64,000 nucleotides of DNA from Haliotis rubra. Taxonomy: Eukaryota. The first letter of the stretch is position 1. Each line of letters begins with the position of its first letter. A program made the position numbers and the translations under genes. This document shows positions 1 through 11,656 of this stretch, piece by piece. The stretch is from positions 1,240,001 through 1,304,000 of the forward strand of contig NW_025765225.1 in NCBI RefSeq assembly GCF_003918875.1, written 5' to 3'. The notes beneath the pieces were generated by a model. The model searched no databases, was not told the origin of the DNA, and saw only the letters and a list, made by a program, of their open reading frames with translations.

Positions 1-82
1 CTTGCATGTGTTGAGTAAAAGGCAGAGTAGTTGAAGACCGACATAGCCGCTCGACATTGTTTTTAGTCGGGGTTTCTTGATA

Positions 83-3000
83 CTATTCATGTGCAATCCT
101 ATTTTCTGATATATAATATATAATAAGTTATTGCGTTTTACAGAGACCCGACTATAGACGAAAGCTAGAAAATAGTTTTTTGTCAACACAACTGGTACTC
201 TATCAAATATCCAATCCAGAAATGAGACAGACACACTGACCTGCTCCAAGTCCATGGCCTGGCTCGGGGACGACACCTTAAACATGATGATTGATGTGTA
301 AGGAAATGTAGAATAAAACCAACAAGTAAAACATGTTTAATAATTATGAACATAAACATCCATTATTAGCAAACTATAATGTTTTGTTATCTTGAAATAT
401 TAATGTTCATGATACATAACACAAAATCCCAGTTTACTCATGTCATTATGGAATATACTTCACGCTAAAATAAATAATGATATTTTACCTGCCCCTATTC
501 CATGTTGGGGCTCAGGTAGTGGCCCCACTCCAAATCCCGGCTCTGGGAGTACACCTATAAACAAATACACATATTACGATGTCTTTATGTTCACGATCAC
601 TGTGATCAAGATATAGTTATGTGCGAAAATATAGTCCTCATTCTCAGCACAAGATAAGATCTCTATTCCTCCAAATGCATGTGATGTCGACGATATGTAT
701 GTGTTTTTCTACTGTCCCTTTTCTTTTGACAGTGAAGGATTGATACCTCTGAGACATTGGCATTTCATTTGTCAGTATTGAGAGGGCCTCTGTTAGTAAT
801 ATTCGAAACTGAATGTATTCACCCTTATAGAAGAAGAAGGGTGGTTTGAGGCTTTTACATATTAATATAGTGAATAATCAAGGTAGTTTCATTACCTGAT
901 CTTATTCCATGTGTGATGTGGATAGCTGGAAACAAATATAAAATGCATACAAATAAAAAACGTGTACACAGTAATATATCATGTTGAGCACAGCATCTGG
1001 TATCTCAAAAGCCAGATCCCATATCTTGCTACAATGTTACCAGTATGTTTGTATTGTGCCGTGTGGCGGTGACTGGTTAACCTGTTCTCACCTGACGTTT
1101 CTGTTCCAGTTCGAGGGTTCCCTACTATGATGCAGACGAGTACTACAGGTGATGTAAAAGACACTGGGTGTATTCCACATTGTATTTTAGTAGGGGATCA
1201 GCTTTAACAAGCAGCTTAATAGTAAAATACCAAAATGCACATTTTTGAAACCATGTAATACATTACAAATTACTCGTGTTGAACACGTAGACCGTTTCAA
1301 TGCATAATGTGGTATATGGAATACGTGTGTAGTCATCAGTGTGATTTCAGAATGCATTGACAGATGTAACCAGCTGTATTCCGAGATCCGACTTTATTTT
1401 CAAAGACAAAGTATTGCACTGTTATCAATGTCATAATGGGTACTAGAGTTTCCCTTGGAAAATCGATTTAGGAAATAGGATTAATTCTCACAGGATTACT
1501 AGATATACGGTAAAACAGGTATGTTTGGAATAGCCTATGCAATGGAGTCGACGACAATATGTTTTACACTATTGAAATAGTATCATAACTATGGAGTTCA
1601 GTTGGTTTGTTTGCTTGTTAGTAAGTTAGTTCTTTAGTTTGCTGTTAATGCACCATTCAGCAATATTCCAGCTACAATATTCCAGCTGGCCTAGTGGTTA
1701 AAGCGTTTGCTCGTCACGCCGAAGACCCGGGTTCGATTCCTCACATGGGTACAACGTGTGAAACCCATTTCTGGTGTCTCCCGCCGTATATTGCTTGAAT
1801 ATTGCTAAAAGCGGCGTAAAACTAACCTAACTCACTCACTCACTCGTAGCTTCAGTTTGTTGTGAACGCCACACAAAGCAACATGAGCATCGATCTTTCC
1901 AATGAGGATTCAATTACAACAAAGTCAGTGAGTCTTATTACAGTCAGTATTGTACTTCCGGGGTCGGGACTTAGAGTGGAACCTATTAGTCGCCTCTAAC
2001 GACAAGCATGGGTTGCTGAAGACCAATTCGAACCCGGATCTTAACGGGGAAGTGTTTTGGGGAAAGGAAGGCATACACAACTGGATACTGTACCTGGTTC
2101 GGGTTTTGGAATCACACCAAATCCAAAAACTGAAAGAGAACAATATTTCTTTGTAAGAATCTGTAAATATGGGACGCTTCTATATGATAACATTTCTTAT
2201 TTGTGTCTGAAAGTATGTATTTGAGTGTCGTTTAATGCCCAAGACAGCAATATTATACAGCCTCGGCTGGACAGACATGGCGTTGATATTATGAACAATG
2301 TCCCGAGACGTAGGTATACAATGAAACACAAGCAACAAGTCACCGAGCGTGACAAACAATCTAAATAATGAAGTAGTATTGTTTGCAAATACCGCACAAA
2401 GATCAGGGGATATCCTTTAACAGGTCACGCCAGAACGACCTTTCATCTGACCGATCACTTACCAAATATAGACAATGACATCTGACAATGACAAGGCATT
2501 CCGAACCACATTTACATGCTGTGCGGCTCATTCTGTCAAACTCATCGTTATTTAGTTCTATTAAATAATCACATGAACGGAAGAAACAGTGCAATACTTA
2601 TAATATCGGCCATCTAGAATTAAGGAATTCTCTTTCCTTCAGATGTTTAAACTGCAGAAACTAGCCTGGAATGGACGTCTCAAGTTAAAACTCGTGCCGT
2701 AAAGCTCGAGAATGATTGCTTATGTCGACTTCATTTCATTAGATCTGTGAGTAACGCTAACCAGCACCAAAATCTAATTTAATGAAATTGGCTTTTAATT
2801 ACTGCTGGTGAATGTTATTTGCAGAAAATATTTTTCAACTTCTAAATCGGAATCTCAGTTTTATCGAACTATCAATAAATAAAGTTTGGAGTCGTGGCCA
2901 TTTCTCCACAAAAAATGTAATCTAAGTGTAGAAATACCACTGTTCGATGAATTACATAGTTTAAAACTAAACAGGCATATACGACGGTAGTAAAATATAG

Positions 3001-3184
3001 AACAGAGCTGTGAATGCCTTCACTAAAATAAATAACAAGTATTCATCGTTATAAGAATTAATATATTCAAGATAGGAGTACATTGTCATACGAAACAATT
3101 TTGTTTGACGAATATATAGTTGAAACACAAATAAGAATATTCACCTGTGGTAAAAGAAAGAATAAGTACTGTAAGTGCCCTCAT
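83..3184 (-). CDS. Orphan 64-aa secreted Pro/Gly/His-rich peptide (PEPG repeats), 5 coding exons: 3145-3184, 896-925, 489-554, 241-276, 83-105
   Basis: Hand-spliced: MRALTVLILSFTTAIHITHG-IRSGVLPEPGFGVGPLPEPQHGIGAGVVPEPGHGLGAENRIAHE*. All introns are GT-AG and phase 1. Internal exons are 30, 66 and 36 nt (multiples of 3), the N-terminus is signal-peptide-like, and TATATA lies ~50 nt upstream of the ATG. The last exon is the least certain; the gene could instead continue beyond the window start. Confidence 0.72.
1687..1845 (+). mobile_element. tRNA-derived SINE family A (5'-truncated), inserted into an oppositely oriented family-B SINE
   Basis: A-box gcctagtggttaaagcg, B-box ggttcgattcc, tail aatattgctaaaagcggcgtaaaac-(actc)n. 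Family-B pieces flank it at ~1600-1686 and ~1880-2048. Confidence 0.85.
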
Positions 3185-3228
3185 GTCAACGGTCCAAGCC
3201 TAATGTTGTAGAGGGTGTATGCAGTAGC

Positions 3229-3238
3229 CCTATATAGA
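3229..3238 (-). promoter_or_regulatory. Candidate TATA box of the PEPG peptide gene
   Basis: cttcTATATAggg on the minus strand ~50 nt upstream of ATG 3184. Confidence 0.5.
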
Positions 3239-3381
3239 AGCTTGTATGTGGAGCTGGTGACACTGTGATATTGATGGCCATATAATGTCCCAGTCACTGT
3301 CGCCCTCTAGGCATTCACGTCACTGTTATTGATGTCTCCGTGTACGTCAACTATGGTATTACACAATGTAGCACTAAGTAA

Positions 3382-4017
3382 GTGTCCATTTTTGACACAT
3401 TGCCATCTGTATTGTCTCAGCTGAGCCTATGAACGCTTCCTTCTGACCCGGGCCACGAAGTCAACACACCTCTTTTTTCGTAAACAATTTATCATCTTTG
3501 CATTTTCTGCAGACTAGATTTACCCCTTCGTTGCAGGAAAAAGAGTTCTGGCTCTGTACGATGTATCGCTGGTCAGGCTGAAAGGACCATATATATTCAT
3601 TATGTATTTGAACTCGCTTACTCAGTGAGAAGTTCTTTGTTATTGGTCTTCAGTAATATAGTCGTATCTCTTATCATCGTTCTAAATTGAGAATGAGTTG
3701 TTTTATATTGTTGTTTGATCAGAGTTACCTCATCTAAATGGGTGTCCATTTTTGACACATTGTCCTCTGTATTGTTTCAGCTGAACCCATGAACGCTTCC
3801 GTGTGACCCGGCAACGAAGTCAACACATAAAACTAACCTTTATGTTTTGGTAAACAATTTGTCATATTAGCATTTCTTGCAGACTAGATTTACTCCTTTG
3901 TTGTAGGAAAGAGAGTTCTGGTTTCGTATGTCCTGCTGGTCAGACTGAACGGAAGGACAATACTCGTCGTCACAATGTACTAGTATCTTTTTATGTATTT
4001 GAACTCTCTTACTCAGT
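3382..4017. repeat. Diverged direct duplication (period ~360 bp) upstream of the peptide gene promoter
   Basis: gtgtccatttttgacacattg...tatgtatttgaactc.cttactcagt occurs at 3382-3626 and again at 3742-4017. Confidence 0.85.
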
Positions 4018-4820: not shown

Positions 4821-5499
4821 ATACCCTGTGACCACAACTCATGGCTTCCTTCCACTTGATCAAAAGTAAAATATATTTACAACAATGGAAGTCAATCATG
4901 TTCATCGATTACATCGTTAAGGCAATACACACATCAGTTTTCACAGACTGTTATTACCTTGCCAGGTATGACAGGTGCTAATTGAGGAGTGTCGGTGACG
5001 CGTTGTACCTTCAAATACCTCTTTAGATCAAAGCCTTGAAACGAAACAGACATCAACGAAGACTACCACGACAGTTGATATGGAATGTAATAACTTATAT
5101 TTGTGGCAGGGGCCTCGGGCTGACCCACTCTACGAGCCAATCATATTTATTCTTTAAACGGATCCTTCTGTCGTCAGTGTCTATAATGATGCCTTGAATA
5201 CGTTATACTTTAGATAAGGAAGGGAAATCAAAGTATGGGTACGTTTTTATGGTAGACACTAGATTATCATTGGAAAATGACGTGGACAAACTGTTACAGT
5301 TACATTATTTGTCGTTAGAGGCTGTATGGTAAATCCTGGGGCCTGGGGCCACCCGTGTCTTCACGTTCTACTGGCTGAGTTCAGTCTCTGTTCTTAAGGT
5401 ATGGTGCATGCGCCAAGTCTTTGTCTTCCGGGTCAGATGGCTGTGTTCAATTTGCCTTCGTAGTCTTGTCCTTGTGTGCACCACTTCTTCTTGTCTATA

Positions 5500-6245
5500 G
5501 CACGTGTTCAGCCAGTGTCTTCCCCATATGGTGCATGTGCCCAATTTGTGTCTTCACTGTGGCGCATCTGTCCAGTTTGTGTCTTCACGGTGCAGTACAT
5601 GTGTCCAGTTTGTGTCTTCACTGTGTGGCGCATGTGTCCAGTTTGTATCTTCATGGTGTGGTGCATGTGCCCAGTTTGTGTCTTCACTGTGTGGTTCATG
5701 TGTCCAGTTTGCGTCTTCACTGTGTGGCGCATGTGTCCAGTTTGTATCTTCATGGTGTGGTGCATGTGCCCAGTTTGTGTCTTCACTGTGTGGTTCATGT
5801 GTCCAGTTTGTGTCTTCACTGTGTGGCGCATGTGTCCAGTTTGTATCTTCATGGTGTGGTGCATGTGCCCAGTTTGTGTCTTCACTGTGTGTGCGCATGT
5901 GTCCAGTTTGCGTCTTAATGATGTGGCGCATGTGTCCAGTTTGTGTCCCCACGGTGTGGCGCATGTGTCCAGTTTGTGTCTTCACGGTGTAGTACATGTC
6001 CAGTTTGTGTCTTCACTGTGTGGCGCATGTGTCCAGTTTGTATCTTCATGGTGTGGCGCATGTGTTCAGTATATGTCTTCACGATGTAGTACATGAATCT
6101 AGTTTGTGTCTTCATGCTGTGGTGCATGTGTCCAGTTTGTGTCTTCACGGTATGTTGCATGTGTCTTGTTTGTATCTTCCTTGTGTGGTGCATGTGCCCA
6201 GTTTGTTTCTTCACGGTGTGGTGCATGTGCCCAGTTTGTTTGTTC
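5500..6245. repeat. 33-bp minisatellite (~22 copies) with a 99-bp higher-order trimer
   Basis: Unit ~ggtgtggtgcatgtgtccagtttgtgtcttcac. The variant catggtgtggtgcatgtgccc recurs at 5652, 5751 and 5850 (99-bp period). Confidence 0.95.
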
Positions 6246-6757
6246 ATCAAATGGTTCGTATGTCATATCTGTATTTGTTTGGTTGTACAAAGTTCTAGTC
6301 GAACATGGATCGAATGTATTGCGTTCATGACGCATATAAGTGAGCCTAGCGCCACGTCAGTATATTGGTGTGGGAGTCAATAGCGGAACGGTAATCTGTC
6401 AGTGAGTGGTAAATTTATGAGGTTCTGTTAAAACGGTAACCTCTGATAAATAACTATAAATAAATAAATTCACAAGCGGGTTGGTGAGACTGAACCATAT
6501 AAAAATCGACACTTAAAACTCTGAACTGCCCAATGAACAGCCCAGTTTAACGCGATGATGAAGTTCTTGTTGTTGCACCGTCGGAATAACAAAATTGATT
6601 ATATTCAGATTCTGTTACAAATTCTGTATGAGTGGCAGTGACTATAGAACTGGTGTATGCGTGGGATAGCAATAGGCATTACAGGTTTGTGGTAATAGTC
6701 TGTTGGCCACCTTACTTGAGACACGTTCTGGGAACAAGATATCATCTTAAAGGTAAA

Positions 6758-9059: not shown

Positions 9060-11656
9060 CTACTTCCCAATCACATGACCGTGGTGGTTTCCGTTTCCGG
9101 TGTGTGGTGGTGTCGGGGTAAGTTGGGGGGACTCGCACAACTTCAAGCACTCGTCTTCCGTCTTGAAGTTGTTGGAGTTACCCCCGCATCCGCTGTAGGG
9201 GAAGATGAGGCACTTGCTTTGGAACATGTCGAAGTAGTACCGGCTCTCGGCACCGTGGCAGTGACCGCTCACCGGCGGCAACAAACACACTGAAGAGTAT
9301 CACATAGGTTGTTAAAACTGCCCGTACACACGAGTCATTATTATTTCCAAAAGCGAACGAGAATTCAGCGTGAGTTAGTTTTTTCATTACATTAGCACAT
9401 TATATTGTATGAATGTAATGAGTGAGTTTGGTTTTACGCCGCTTTCAGCAATATTCCAGCAATATCACGGCAGGGGACACCAGAAATGGGTTTCTCATAT
9501 CGTACCCATGTGGGGAATCGAACCCGGGTCTTCGGCGTGACGAGCGAACGCTTTAACCACAAGGCTATTCCACCGCCCCATGAATGTGTAATGGATGAAT
9601 ATTACCAATATCGACAGATCAAAAGTGGGTACAAAACAGACCGTTTTCAAATAGTAGTCAATAAGTTTAACAAAAACGTTCATGCATATTGGATATAGAT
9701 TACGTTTGGTGTAAAGAGCAAAAGGTCGTGAGAATCATATGCATAGATATCATTGGGAAATTGGCCTCTCAAAATTCATGAGCCTTTTCAGTGTTCAGGT
9801 GACACGTCTTTACAGTACAGACCACGATCTTGAGCCCTTTTTAACCTATTGGCACTAGACAGATTAAGATGGGGGTTAAAGACAACAAGCAGAAACAGAC
9901 CCTGTTATATTTTCTGACCGGAGATACGTAACTACTTTCCTGAGTGAGATGGACAACTGTCTTCTACAATTAGTTTCGTTGGTTTGTTGTTTAACGCCGC
10001 ACTCAGCAATATTCCAGCTATATGGCGGCAGTCTGTAAATAATCGAGTCTGGACCAGACAATCCAGTGATCAACAGCATGAGCATTGATCTACGCAATTG
10101 GGATACGATGACATGTTGGTCAACCAAGTCAGCGAGCCTGACCATCCGATCCCGTCACTCGCCTCTTACGACAAGCATGGGTTGCTGAAGACCAATTTTT
10201 GACCCGGGTCTTCACGGGTCTCTTACACTTTGTGAAATACCAAACATATTATAACTTTCCGATGTTTCACGAGGCTACTCATTGAACTCAACTAAAAAGA
10301 ATCAAAACCATGCAAGCATGTTACTGCGACTAGAAATATAAAATAAAAATGAAATTTCTTTGATATAAAATGTTTTTAAATGACGTTTGACTAAAAAATA
10401 TTAAAACCCCTTTCAATAAAAAATACTCCTTTGCGCATGTGCTTCTGAACTTTACAAACGAGTATTGTCTATGTAAACATATCGCGTTAATCCAAGTCAT
10501 TATCAAAGGACGTATCATAATCCAGTAGGTTTGATTCAAGTTGATTGAATTCTCATATATTTTGCTGAATGATTTATATTATATTATATTTGAAGAAATC
10601 ATGGATACACTCTATTTACTGAACGCATTTGTGTGCGTTTAGTCTGACGCCGCTTTCAGCAATATTCAAGTAATATCACGGCGGGTGACACCAGAAATGG
10701 GCTTCACACATTGTACCCATTTGGGAATAGAACCCGTGTCTTCGGCCCGACGAACGAACGCTTTAACCACTAGGCTACCCCATCGCCGATATACTAAACG
10801 GAAAGAGGCAGTGGTAATAAAACCTGTATCACAACATATTATTCTTGATGTTTCAAACGTATTTCACTGAGGGAAGTAACTTCAAAACCGTGAACGCATT
10901 GTGCAGCCACATTTGTTTACAGAACCATCCACTTATTGGGAACCGTGTAGTTTCGTGGATAGAACGACTTCCAAGAGAGCAGAATTTGTAACTAAAACAG
11001 ATATACACACTATTAATTCATCTTGTATACAGTGAACACTCCCAAACAGCAGGTGGATATTCTTAGTCTAGATTCAGAAGTGCACCTGGCAATTCCCACA
11101 ATGACTTACTCTTAGAAAGGTGAAGGTCGTTTAACTGACGTCTTTAATTAGAACGGCCGTCTTACCTATATCTGAAAACAAAAACAAATCATATAACTAC
11201 AGAATCATAAATTGTGTTGACTTTCTGATGCAAGGAACATTCTGAAAAAAGTAAACATAGAAACACCCACTCGATCGATTCGGGGCAACAGAATATAACA
11301 GTTTTGTTATGCTTCATTTCTGTTTCTACTCTCATCTAGCACCACGGATTAAAAGAATACAAAAAGACAATTTAAGTTTCACCTGAGTCATAGCTAGTAA
11401 ACACCTCATGTCTCAATATCCTGGCATTTTCTTTAACGGGTTCAAAGATACCAGAATGTTAGATGTTTAGTTTCAAACTGACAGACAAACTAATTTTTTT
11501 ACGTTACGAATATCGGTTTTCAGTTTAAAAACGTCATGGAACATATATAATCCGACTCACCCAGTACCGTCAGTAGCACTTACCATAACTGTCGATTCGT
11601 GACACGCAACTGAATATGACCAATAAGGCGACTGTGGACGCCCAGACTCGGTTCAT
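9060..11656 (-). CDS. Secreted single-domain Kunitz/BPTI-type protease inhibitor (~102 aa); exons 11584-11656, candidate micro-exon 11166-11171, 9060-9289
   Basis: Signal exon MNRVWASTVALLVIFSCVSRIDSY with G|GTAAGT donor. Kunitz domain with 6 Cys at BPTI spacing and FxYxGCxGNxNNF. Phase-1 junctions. AATAAA ~30 nt after the stop (9025-9030). Confidence 0.92.
9420..9578 (-). mobile_element. SINE family A, full length
   Basis: tRNA-like head with A/B boxes, same body as 1687-1845. Confidence 0.9.
9975..10220 (-). mobile_element. SINE family B (V-domain-like core cttgtcgtaagaggcga)
   Basis: Matches the copy at 43557-43772 and fragments at ~1985-2048, ~25900-26050 and ~58700-58760; shares its 3' tail with family A. 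Confidence 0.85.
10631..10787 (-). mobile_element. SINE family A, diverged copy
   Basis: ccagaaatgggcttcacacattgtaccc...aacgctttaaccactaggctaccc. Confidence 0.85.

What the first reader, a model, noticed from the sequence alone, without database searches (positions are those of the whole stretch)
83..3184. Hidden micro-exon gene for a small secreted PEPG-repeat peptide
Seen: exons of 40, 30, 66, 36 and 23 nt, all joined in phase 1, give a signal peptide plus three copies of G(V/P)(V/L)PEP(G/Q)(H/F)G(L/V/I). One exon encodes two repeats and the next encodes one, so the protein appears to grow by symmetric exon duplication and could be length-tuned by exon skipping. No exon is long enough to appear in the ORF track. 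Established: molluscan shell-matrix, mucus and defence proteins are often lineage-specific, secreted and low-complexity. Inference: an undescribed structural, metal-binding (His/Glu) or antimicrobial peptide. I recognise no family.
Basis: partly seen in the sequence, partly recalled or inferred. Interest (0 to 1): 0.72.

Follow-up and report, generated by a model that had tools for sequence, protein, structure and literature searches.

The report
Abalone PEPG micro-exon gene, longer than reported
The tiny PEPG-repeat exons are real and look kept by selection, but they are probably the front of a larger secreted blacklip-abalone protein that runs off the window and likely ends in a Kunitz protease-inhibitor domain; no RNA evidence could be obtained.

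Summary
The window is Haliotis rubra contig C335:1240001-1304000.

**Confirmed.** All have AG/GT borders and phase 1.

**Coding signal.**
- The motif [PA]EP[GQE][HF]G occurs 7 times in 74 kb, all at this locus. Shuffles gave 0.
- Repeat units differ 0.31/0.20/0.64 at codon positions 1/2/3 (pN/pS 0.35).
- A duplicated 66-nt exon is 97% identical, while its intron flanks are 76% identical (P about 2e-6).

- A 36-nt exon at 2129-2094.
- Beyond base 1: two more repeat exons and an Arg-rich exon.
- Probably also a Gly/His-heptad exon and a Kunitz exon, giving about 427 aa.

Intron phases, cysteine parity, the lack of any other signal-peptide exon, and an annotated signal-plus-Kunitz paralogue 6 kb upstream all favour one long gene.

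**Relatives.** None were found for the repeat or Arg-rich parts. The locus appears unannotated, although the neighbouring gene is annotated.

**Limits.** Function is inferred only: a secreted, disordered, His-rich scaffold carrying a Kunitz domain. Interest is moderate.

The parts
3231..3236 (-). TATA-like box (TATATA), 52 nt upstream of the ATG
   Evidence: Read directly. Position fits a TATA promoter with a 5'UTR of about 20 nt. Function is inferred.
3145..3184 (-). Exon 1, 40 nt: ATG plus signal-peptide-like MRALTVLILSFTT; ends in phase 1; donor CAG|GTGAAT
   Evidence: mean Kyte-Doolittle 2.58 over residues 3-11. Unique in the genome. SignalP was not available.
2094..2129 (-).
   Evidence: Acceptor attgttctctttcag (85% pyrimidine), donor CAG|GTACAG. 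DNA resembles the middle of E3 (GGATTTGG.GTG...CC.GA.CC). Inclusion in mRNA is untested.
896..925 (-). Exon E2, 30 nt, phase 1-1, (A)IHITHGIRS(G). Its 3' half resembles the 3' end of E3 (CAYCATGGAATA...CAG|GTAA)
489..554 (-). Exon E3, 66 nt, phase 1-1, two repeat units: (G)VLPEPGFGVGPLPEPQHGIGA(G)
   Evidence: It has a 64/66-identical duplicate at C335:1239157-1239092, with 76% identical intron flanks.
241..276 (-). Exon E4, 36 nt, phase 1-1, one unit: (G)VVPEPGHGLGA(G)
   Evidence: A diverged duplicate (30/36) lies at C335:1238651-1238616.
1..240 (-). Start of the intron that runs off the window. The next exons lie outside the window. E5 is C335:1239157-1239092 (66 nt). E6 is 1238651-1238616 (36 nt, AIAEPGHGIGA). 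E7 is 1238205-1237988 (IPEPEHGPGG..., Arg-rich; donor TGG|GTAAGG in phase 0, or a stop at 1237969-1237967). E8 is 1236402-1235841 (Gly/His heptads). E9 is 1234974-1234781 (Kunitz domain, then stop).
83..105 (-).
   Evidence: No repeat motif, an AT-rich acceptor and no poly(A) signal within 400 nt. Better-supported exons follow off the window.
9063..9289 (-). Context: Kunitz exon of the upstream tandem paralogue, the annotated H. rubra 'kunitz-type serine protease inhibitor 2-like' (102 aa). It is entered in phase 1, like E9.
   Evidence: 46% identity to E9
11584..11656 (-). Context: signal-peptide exon of that paralogue (MNRVWASTVALLVIFSCVSRIDSY); ends in phase 1

Best explanation
The PEPG micro-exons are genuine coding cassette exons of one lineage-specific gene of the blacklip abalone. 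The gene starts at window 3184 on the minus strand and runs about 8.4 kb, mostly beyond the window start.

The most likely product is a secreted modular protein of about 427 aa, made of these parts in order:
- A short signal peptide (E1).
- An acidic Pro/Gly/Glu/His repeat region of about 85 residues, encoded by six symmetric phase 1-1 exons of 30-66 nt (E1b, E2, E3, E4, E5, E6). It has one His or Phe and one Glu per unit of about 11 residues.
- An Arg-rich segment (E7, net charge about +15).
- A four-cysteine cluster spanning the E7/E8 junction.
- About 12-15 Gly/His heptads of the form xGH(V/I)(H/D)G(L/P) (E8).
- A C-terminal Kunitz/BPTI domain (E9) with Gln at the position aligning with BPTI P1 (my alignment by cysteine spacing, not a tool result).

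Proposed origin: a tandem duplicate of a simple signal-plus-Kunitz inhibitor gene (the annotated neighbour) had its phase-1 intron filled by phase-1-compatible modules. Those modules then multiplied by exon and block duplication.

Proposed working (inferred, not shown): a disordered, His-rich, pH- or metal-responsive extracellular scaffold that carries or anchors a Kunitz domain. The length of the PEPG spacer can be changed without breaking the frame, because every cassette exon is phase 1-1.
For: Shown:
- Exon borders and phases were read directly.
- The motif is confined to this locus: 7 hits against 0 in shuffles.
- The repeat units evolve like coding sequence in this frame. Pairwise differences are 0.31/0.20/0.64 at codon positions 1/2/3, and pN/pS is 0.35.
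- The E3/E5 duplicates are 64/66 identical with no indels. Their intron flanks are 76% identical with 44 gap columns (P about 2e-6).
- E1, E3/E5, E4 and E7 occur nowhere else in the 1.38-Gb genome.

For the long model:
- The E7 donor TGG|GTAAGG is phase 0 and the E8 acceptor cattgcag|CAA is phase 0. The E8 donor AAA|GTAAGT is phase 1 and the E9 acceptor ctccag|TC is phase 1.
- E8 has no in-frame ATG, and no signal-peptide exon lies in the 1.6-kb E7-E8 gap. A disulfide-rich Kunitz domain (Pfam PF00014, E 1e-17; PDB hits) needs secretion.
- E7 has 1 Cys and E8 has 3. Joined, they make an even cluster of 4.
- The start of E7 (EHGPGG, GINS) echoes E8 (HGPGGH, GINS).
- The annotated upstream paralogue has exactly the ancestral layout: a signal exon ending in phase 1 and a Kunitz exon entered in phase 1.
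Against:
- E7 found nothing in an exhaustive phmmer search of 1.84 billion representatives.
- E7 and E8 found nothing in word searches. The same database does hold the annotated neighbour from this very contig. The locus therefore seems unannotated, which may mean little RNA support in the tissues sampled.
- E7 has a weak acceptor (tgctggaatag).
- E7 also reads on only 6 codons to a stop, with AATAAA 156 nt later. That is equally compatible with a gene ending there.
- Promoter and exon 1 show no convincing similarity to the paralogue.
- None of the motif strings occur in the greenlip abalone shell-proteome supplements.
- The E8 heptads show little codon-position bias.
Confidence: 0.5

Rival explanations
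1. The PEPG gene is real but ends in E7 at the stop C335:1237969-1237967. It would give a secreted protein of about 175-187 aa with an acidic His/Pro/Gly repeat front and a strongly cationic Arg-rich tail, for example a pro-region plus a basic peptide. The Gly/His plus Kunitz exons would belong to another transcript, or be orphaned.
For: The stop codon lies 6 codons after the candidate donor, and AATAAA follows 156 nt later. The charge split is about -8 against +15/+17. RR and RxxR sites sit at the boundary. AlphaFold, run on the single sequence, draws three helices in the tail, but at low confidence (mean pLDDT 60).
Against: A strong GTAAG donor in exactly the phase that E8 needs would be a coincidence, about 3% by my own rough estimate. 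E8-E9 would lack any signal exon. Both products would have an odd number of cysteines. The hydrophobic moment of the tail is not above shuffles (492 of 2000 reach it).
Confidence: 0.22
2. The locus is a decaying or never-expressed relic. On this view it was once a functional duplicate of the Kunitz gene that picked up repeat exons, it is no longer transcribed, and its frames are still open by chance or recency.
For: No annotated protein contains E7 or E8, although the neighbour gene is annotated. No RNA data could be obtained. E7 has a weak acceptor.
Against: All ten exons keep open frames, compatible phases and AG/GT borders, despite about 24% divergence of the duplicated intron flanks. Third-position-biased divergence among units shows past purifying selection. 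E8 has 0% indels in its 21-nt repeat.
Confidence: 0.18
3. One reading: a five-exon gene for a peptide of about 65 aa that stops in exon 105-83.
For: An AG acceptor and an in-frame stop exist at 105-83. It could be a minor isoform.
Against: There is no repeat motif, no poly(A) signal within 400 nt and only an AT-rich acceptor. Such stop exons arise by chance. Conserved, in-phase repeat exons continue 0.8-1.4 kb further on.
Confidence: 0.04

Closest known systems
Kunitz/BPTI inhibitors of abalone, including the annotated neighbour 'kunitz-type serine protease inhibitor 2-like' (H. rubra) and the shell protein KCP
   Same: The terminal exon encodes a complete six-cysteine Kunitz domain (PF00014, E 1e-17). 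The intron position and phase before the first Cys match the neighbour, with 46% identity. It is a same-strand tandem neighbour.
   Different: The neighbour is 102 aa with only a signal peptide and one domain. KCP has two Kunitz domains (PMC2989941). Here about 360 residues of low-complexity sequence would precede the domain. The P1-equivalent residue is Gln. The link of the Kunitz exon to the PEPG exons is inferred, not shown.
Micro-exon genes (MEGs) of Schistosoma
   Same: A signal-peptide first exon is followed by a run of very short symmetric exons (multiples of 3). Exon skipping would therefore give in-frame protein variants. The product is secreted and lineage-specific.
   Different: There is no sequence relationship. 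The exons here are 30-66 nt rather than mostly 36 nt or less. In the long model only 270 of 1284 coding nt lie in micro-exons. Alternative splicing is not shown. The literature search found MEGs only in flatworms.
Tropoelastin and titin PEVK cassette-exon regions (from general knowledge)
   Same: Small exons, each encoding one or two Pro/Gly/Val-rich (or P/E/V/K-rich) repeat units, all split codons the same way, so the number of units can vary by exon duplication or skipping. The sequence is predicted to be disordered and extensible.
   Different: There is no homology, no Lys cross-linking exons, and only about 8 units. The Glu-Pro and His content is not elastin-like.
His/Gly-rich structural proteins (squid beak HBPs, Nereis jaw Nvjp-1, mussel byssal His-rich domains) and other Gly/His genes noted in this genome by the scan
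   Same: Secreted and disordered, with regularly spaced His in a Gly-rich background (E8 heptads; GHG(L/I)GAG in the PEPG units). This suggests metal- or pH-dependent assembly.
   Different: The similarity is at motif level only. The GHGxY pentads of beak proteins are absent. E8-like hits elsewhere in the genome are weak (45% or less). No tissue or metal data exist.

Membership tests
Kunitz/BPTI domain (PF00014) | Profile match above the gathering score, with the six-cysteine pattern | tested here: met
   E9 (C335:1234972-1234781) scores 64.5 bits against a cut-off of 21, E 9.9e-18. PDB Kunitz hits reach E 9e-22.
Kunitz/BPTI domain (PF00014) | The domain is part of the same transcript as the PEPG exons | tested here: inconclusive
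   Phases, cysteine parity, the lack of another signal exon and the paralogue layout favour it. No RNA data were available.
Schistosome-type micro-exon gene (MEG) | Most of the coding sequence lies in symmetric micro-exons of 36 nt or less, between a signal exon and a last exon | tested here: not met
   The exons are 36, 30, 66, 36, 66 and 36 nt, and all are symmetric. They make 270 of about 524 nt (short model) or 270 of 1284 nt (long model).
Schistosome-type micro-exon gene (MEG) | Protein variation by alternative splicing of the micro-exons | not testable with these tools
Abalone shell matrix proteins (e.g. KCP) | Peptides or sequence found in a shell proteome | tested here: not met
   Six motif strings from the PEPG, Arg-rich and Gly/His parts are absent from 28 supplementary files of the H. 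laevigata shell proteome and from all searchable papers. This is a weak negative: the PEPG region has almost no tryptic sites.
Cationic antimicrobial peptide precursor (anionic pro-region plus amphipathic basic peptide) | Amphipathic helix in the basic part | tested here: inconclusive
   The best 18-residue hydrophobic moment is 0.63, reached by 492 of 2000 shuffles. Helices are predicted only at pLDDT about 60-70.
Secreted protein (classical signal peptide) | N-terminal basic residue, a hydrophobic core of 7-15 residues, and small residues at -3 and -1 | tested here: met
   M-R, then ALTVLILSF (mean KD 2.58), then T-T-A if E2 follows. Judged by simple rules only, because SignalP was not available.
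Any Pfam family for the repeat, Arg-rich or Gly/His parts | Profile match | tested here: not met
   No family at E up to 10 for E3, E5 and E7, and none for E8.

The most novel reading that the evidence does not exclude
A mollusc gene in which the single phase-1 intron of a small Kunitz inhibitor gene has been colonised by a series of symmetric micro-exons and low-complexity modules. These would be used combinatorially, as in schistosome MEGs or titin PEVK, to make a family of secreted isoforms. The isoforms would differ in spacer length and in whether they end as a basic peptide or as a Kunitz domain. This would be the first micro-exon cassette system described outside flatworms.
Probability: 0.2. 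Interest if true: 0.6.

Novelty: new member of a known kind. Interest (0 to 1): 0.38.

Why it matters
If the gene is expressed, it is a clean natural example of how a plain protease-inhibitor gene becomes a long modular matrix-type protein. Phase-1 cassette exons pile up inside one intron, and every intermediate element is still visible at one locus: the simple paralogue, single units, a fused two-unit exon and a duplicated exon block. It also shows that standard annotation can miss such genes in molluscs, because six of the ten exons are 30-66 nt long. For abalone biology it adds a candidate secreted His-rich, Kunitz-bearing protein whose tissue and role are unknown. If it is not expressed, it is only a well-preserved relic.

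Tried and rejected

**Spliced model**
- All searches were exon by exon by reference. The joined-protein search, SignalP-type analysis of the joined N-terminus and a fold of the whole product were left out.

**Searches with no hits**
- Pfam on E3, E5, E7 and E8.
- Word search with E7 and E8.
- Exhaustive phmmer with E7.
- Literature searches for twelve motif strings.
- H. laevigata shell-proteome supplements.
- Rfam on 1-3400.

**Other tests**
- Own-genome searches for paralogues of E1, E3, E4 and E7 found only the locus itself.
- The antimicrobial-helix idea failed: the hydrophobic moment is not above shuffles.
- Promoter and exon 1 homology to the neighbour is not convincing.
- A scan of the E7-E8 gap found no separate first exon for the Gly/His-Kunitz part and no other coding-like frame.
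- I considered a longer version of E7 starting at the acceptor ccccaaatag (C335:1238250). I rate it less likely because it adds an unpaired Cys, but I cannot exclude it.
Full report
**Where this is.** The window is contig C335:1240001-1304000 of a 1.378-Gb, 2855-contig genome. A protein encoded 6 kb from the finding matches at 100% an NCBI entry named 'kunitz-type serine protease inhibitor 2-like [Haliotis rubra]', on a contig of the same length, 4,544,917 bp. The organism is therefore the blacklip abalone.

**Checking the observation.** On the minus strand I read these exons:

| Exon | Window coordinates | Length | Encodes | Borders |
|---|---|---|---|---|
| E1 | 3184-3145 | 40 nt | ATG, MRALTVLILSFTT | donor CAG\|GTGAAT |
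| E2 | 925-896 | 30 nt | (A)IHITHGIRS(G) | |
| E3 | 554-489 | 66 nt | (G)VLPEPGFGVGPLPEPQHGIGA(G) | |
| E4 | 276-241 | 36 nt | (G)VVPEPGHGLGA(G) | |

- TATATA lies at 3236-3231, 52 nt upstream of the ATG.
- E2, E3 and E4 each lie between a pyrimidine-rich YAG acceptor and a CAG|GT donor. Each starts and ends in phase 1.
- The repeat is not chance. [PA]EP[GQE][HF]G occurs seven times in the six-frame translation of 74 kb, all at this locus and on this strand. None occurred in 100 shuffles.
- AG..GT segments that stay open in phase 1-1 are common on their own: 215 lie across the locus. The evidence therefore rests on the motif, not on the splice dinucleotides.

A sixth cassette exon lies at 2129-2094. 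It is 36 nt, phase 1-1, and encodes (V)FGFGVIPKPEP(G). Its acceptor is ttctctttcag and its donor is CAG|GTACAG. Its DNA resembles the middle of E3. The 3' end of E2 also resembles the 3' end of E3. All the cassette exons therefore look like descendants of one ancestral unit.

**The terminal exon is an edge artefact.** A search of the genome with window:1-1000 found two more matches just outside the window:
- 81% identity to the E3 region at C335:1239020-1239310.
- 83% identity to the E4 region at C335:1238605-1238662.

I fetched the flank and read it. In the table below, L004 coordinate = contig coordinate minus 1,230,000.

| Exon | L004 coordinates | Length | Encodes or features |
|---|---|---|---|
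| E5 | 9157-9092 | 66 nt | VLPEPGFGVGPLPEPEHGIGA |
| E6 | 8651-8616 | 36 nt | AIAEPGHGIGA |
| E7 | starts 8205 | | IPEPEHGPGG, then an Arg-rich stretch |

- E7 begins with another unit and continues through an Arg-rich stretch to ...RVRNCW. It contains 15 Arg in the stretch up to the candidate donor, and its net charge read to the stop is +15.
- At that point there is a strong donor, TGG|GTAAGG. Alternatively the frame reads on six more codons to a stop at 7969-7967.
- All three exons keep phase 1 on entry.
No poly(A) signal lies within 400 nt.

**Is it coding?** Two tests say yes.
- I aligned six diverged units codon by codon (E1b, E3a, E3b, E4, E6, E7). Pairwise differences are 0.31, 0.20 and 0.64 at codon positions 1, 2 and 3, and pN/pS is 0.35. 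The Pro-Glu-Pro codons use almost every synonymous form. The pairs are not independent, but the direction is plain.
- The E3-E4 block was duplicated to give E5-E6. Since then the E3/E5 exon has kept 64 of 66 bases with no indel. The aligned intron flanks are 76% identical with 44 gap columns (binomial P about 2e-6).
- The 70 nt upstream of the exon are also better kept (89%). That could reflect splicing signals for a small exon or a conversion tract.
- E4/E6 are 30/36 identical. The changes cluster in the first three codons, and EPGHG(L/I)GAG is kept.

**Where does the gene end?** Downstream of E7 on the same strand lie two more exons.

*E8 (L004 6402-5841)*
- Acceptor is cattgcag|CAA in phase 0. 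Donor is AAA|GTAAGT in phase 1.
- It encodes QCPRQTVCEYVDRWTSYCVPR, then NGG-type repeats, then 12-15 heptads of the type xGH(V/I)(H/D)G(L/P).
- The heptads form a 21-nt tandem repeat with no indels.

*E9 (L004 4974-4781)*
- Acceptor is ctccag|TC in phase 1.
- It encodes a complete Kunitz domain followed by a stop (Pfam PF00014, E 1e-17; PDB Kunitz hits).
- AATAAA follows 211 nt later.

*Reasons I think E7 splices to E8*
- The strong E7 donor is in exactly the phase E8 requires. E7 plus E8 together then form a phase 1-to-1 module.
- E8 has no in-frame ATG. The 1.6-kb gap holds no signal-peptide exon and no other coding-like frame. A Kunitz domain must be secreted.
- E7 carries one Cys and E8 carries three. 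Together they make C-x2-C-x6-C-x10-C, an even set.
- The start of E7 (EHGPGG, GINS) echoes E8 (HGPGGH, GINS).
- The upstream neighbour on the same strand shows the simple ancestral layout. Its signal exon is 11656-11584 and ends in phase 1. Its Kunitz exon is 9289-9063 and is entered in phase 1 one codon before the first Cys, with 46% identity to E9.

The whole model is 1284 coding nt, or 427 aa.

*Reasons for doubt*
- The stop and AATAAA just after the E7 donor fit a shorter gene of about 175-187 aa equally well.
- The E7 acceptor is weak.
- I put the long model at about 0.5 and the short one at about 0.2. Both could exist as isoforms.

**Relatives and annotation.**
- No Pfam family matches the repeat, the Arg-rich part or the Gly/His part.
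- E7 found nothing in the word search or in an exhaustive phmmer scan of 1.84 billion representatives.
- E8 found nothing among proteins of 103-327 aa.
- The database does contain this genome's NCBI annotation, because the neighbour gene was returned at 100% identity.
- The blanks therefore mean that no annotated protein contains E7. They also mean that no annotated protein of 103-327 aa contains E8. In that sense the gene really is 'hidden'.
- This also hints that the RNA data used for annotation gave little support. That is why I keep 0.18 on a silent relic.
- E1, E3/E5, E4 and E7 are unique in the genome. E8-like Gly/His repeats have many weak matches elsewhere, at 45% identity or less.
- None of twelve motif strings occurs in the paper library. 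None of the six searched there occurs in the supplements of the greenlip abalone shell proteome.
- Micro-exon genes appear in the literature only for flatworms.

**What I could not do.**
- Joining the exons for a search, for SignalP or for a fold was left out.
- No other abalone genome is reachable with these tools, so cross-species conservation is untested.

**How it probably works.**

*Shown*
- The exon anatomy, the phases and the signature of coding selection.
- The block duplication of E3-E4.
- The Kunitz domain.
- The paralogue upstream.

*Inferred*
- The protein is secreted. This rests on simple signal-peptide rules only: M-R, a nine-residue core with mean hydropathy 2.58, and T-T-A.
- The PEPG region is an extended, acidic, proline-kinked spacer with one His or Phe per unit. 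Because each cassette is phase 1-1, its length can change by exon gain, loss or skipping without breaking the frame.
- Together with the Gly/His heptads, it gives a pH- or metal-sensitive disordered scaffold that carries a Kunitz domain.
- By my own alignment on cysteine spacing (not a tool result), that domain has Gln where BPTI has its P1 Lys. It is therefore probably not a trypsin-type inhibitor.

*Weakly tested alternatives*
- The Arg-rich segment is drawn as three helices, but only at low confidence (pLDDT about 60). It is no more amphipathic than shuffles, so I do not favour an antimicrobial peptide.
- A shell-matrix role is possible by analogy but has a weak negative.

**Verdict.**
- Observation: partly confirmed.
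- Interpretation: partly supported.
- This is a new, apparently unannotated member of a familiar kind: a lineage-specific molluscan secreted protein built of low-complexity modules around a Kunitz domain. Its micro-exon architecture is unusually tidy.
- Interest is moderate, limited by the lack of any expression evidence.

Noticed in passing
window 9606-9611 (-), within the intron 11583-9290 of the neighbour gene: The annotated 102-aa Kunitz protein has two residues (Asp-Ile) between its signal exon and its Kunitz exon. These need a 6-nt phase 1-1 micro-exon. The only ATATTG followed by a GT donor in the intron is at 9611-9606, but the assembly reads CG, not AG, before it. This could be a non-canonical acceptor, a polymorphism or an assembly error. 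If real, the simple paralogue is also a micro-exon gene.
   Followed up: partly
L004:6530-6710 and L004:4605-4781 (C335:1236530-1236710 and 1234605-1234781), minus strand: The roughly 170 bp that directly follow the Kunitz stop codon are duplicated at 78% identity in the E7-E8 gap, about 130 nt upstream of E8, and are followed there by ATTAAA. These are the only two copies in the genome. It may be a remnant of an older gene end or a local duplication. No Kunitz-like coding remnant precedes the upstream copy.
   Followed up: partly
window ~1700-1850, ~9430-9590, ~10020-10210: Copies of a tRNA-like SINE (…ggcgtgacgagc…ttaaccactaggc… with a GAGT microsatellite head) sit in the introns of both genes. 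Rfam gave no hit at E 0.01 or below for 1-3400.
   Followed up: partly
window ~5400-6300: A long minisatellite is open in several frames on both strands (for example HVSSLCLHGVV units). It lies between the two Kunitz-type genes and is probably non-coding.
   Followed up: no
L004:1061-3805 (C335:1231061-1233805), minus strand: Reverse-transcriptase-like ORFs of a non-LTR retroelement lie just downstream of the Kunitz exon.
   Followed up: no
G000 contigs C2685:37257-38632, C817:85760-97261, C2423:830108-831132: Large arrays of Gly/His-rich open frames are weakly similar (30-45%) to the E8 heptads. C817 holds about 12 kb of them. This genome has many His/Gly repeat genes.
   Followed up: no
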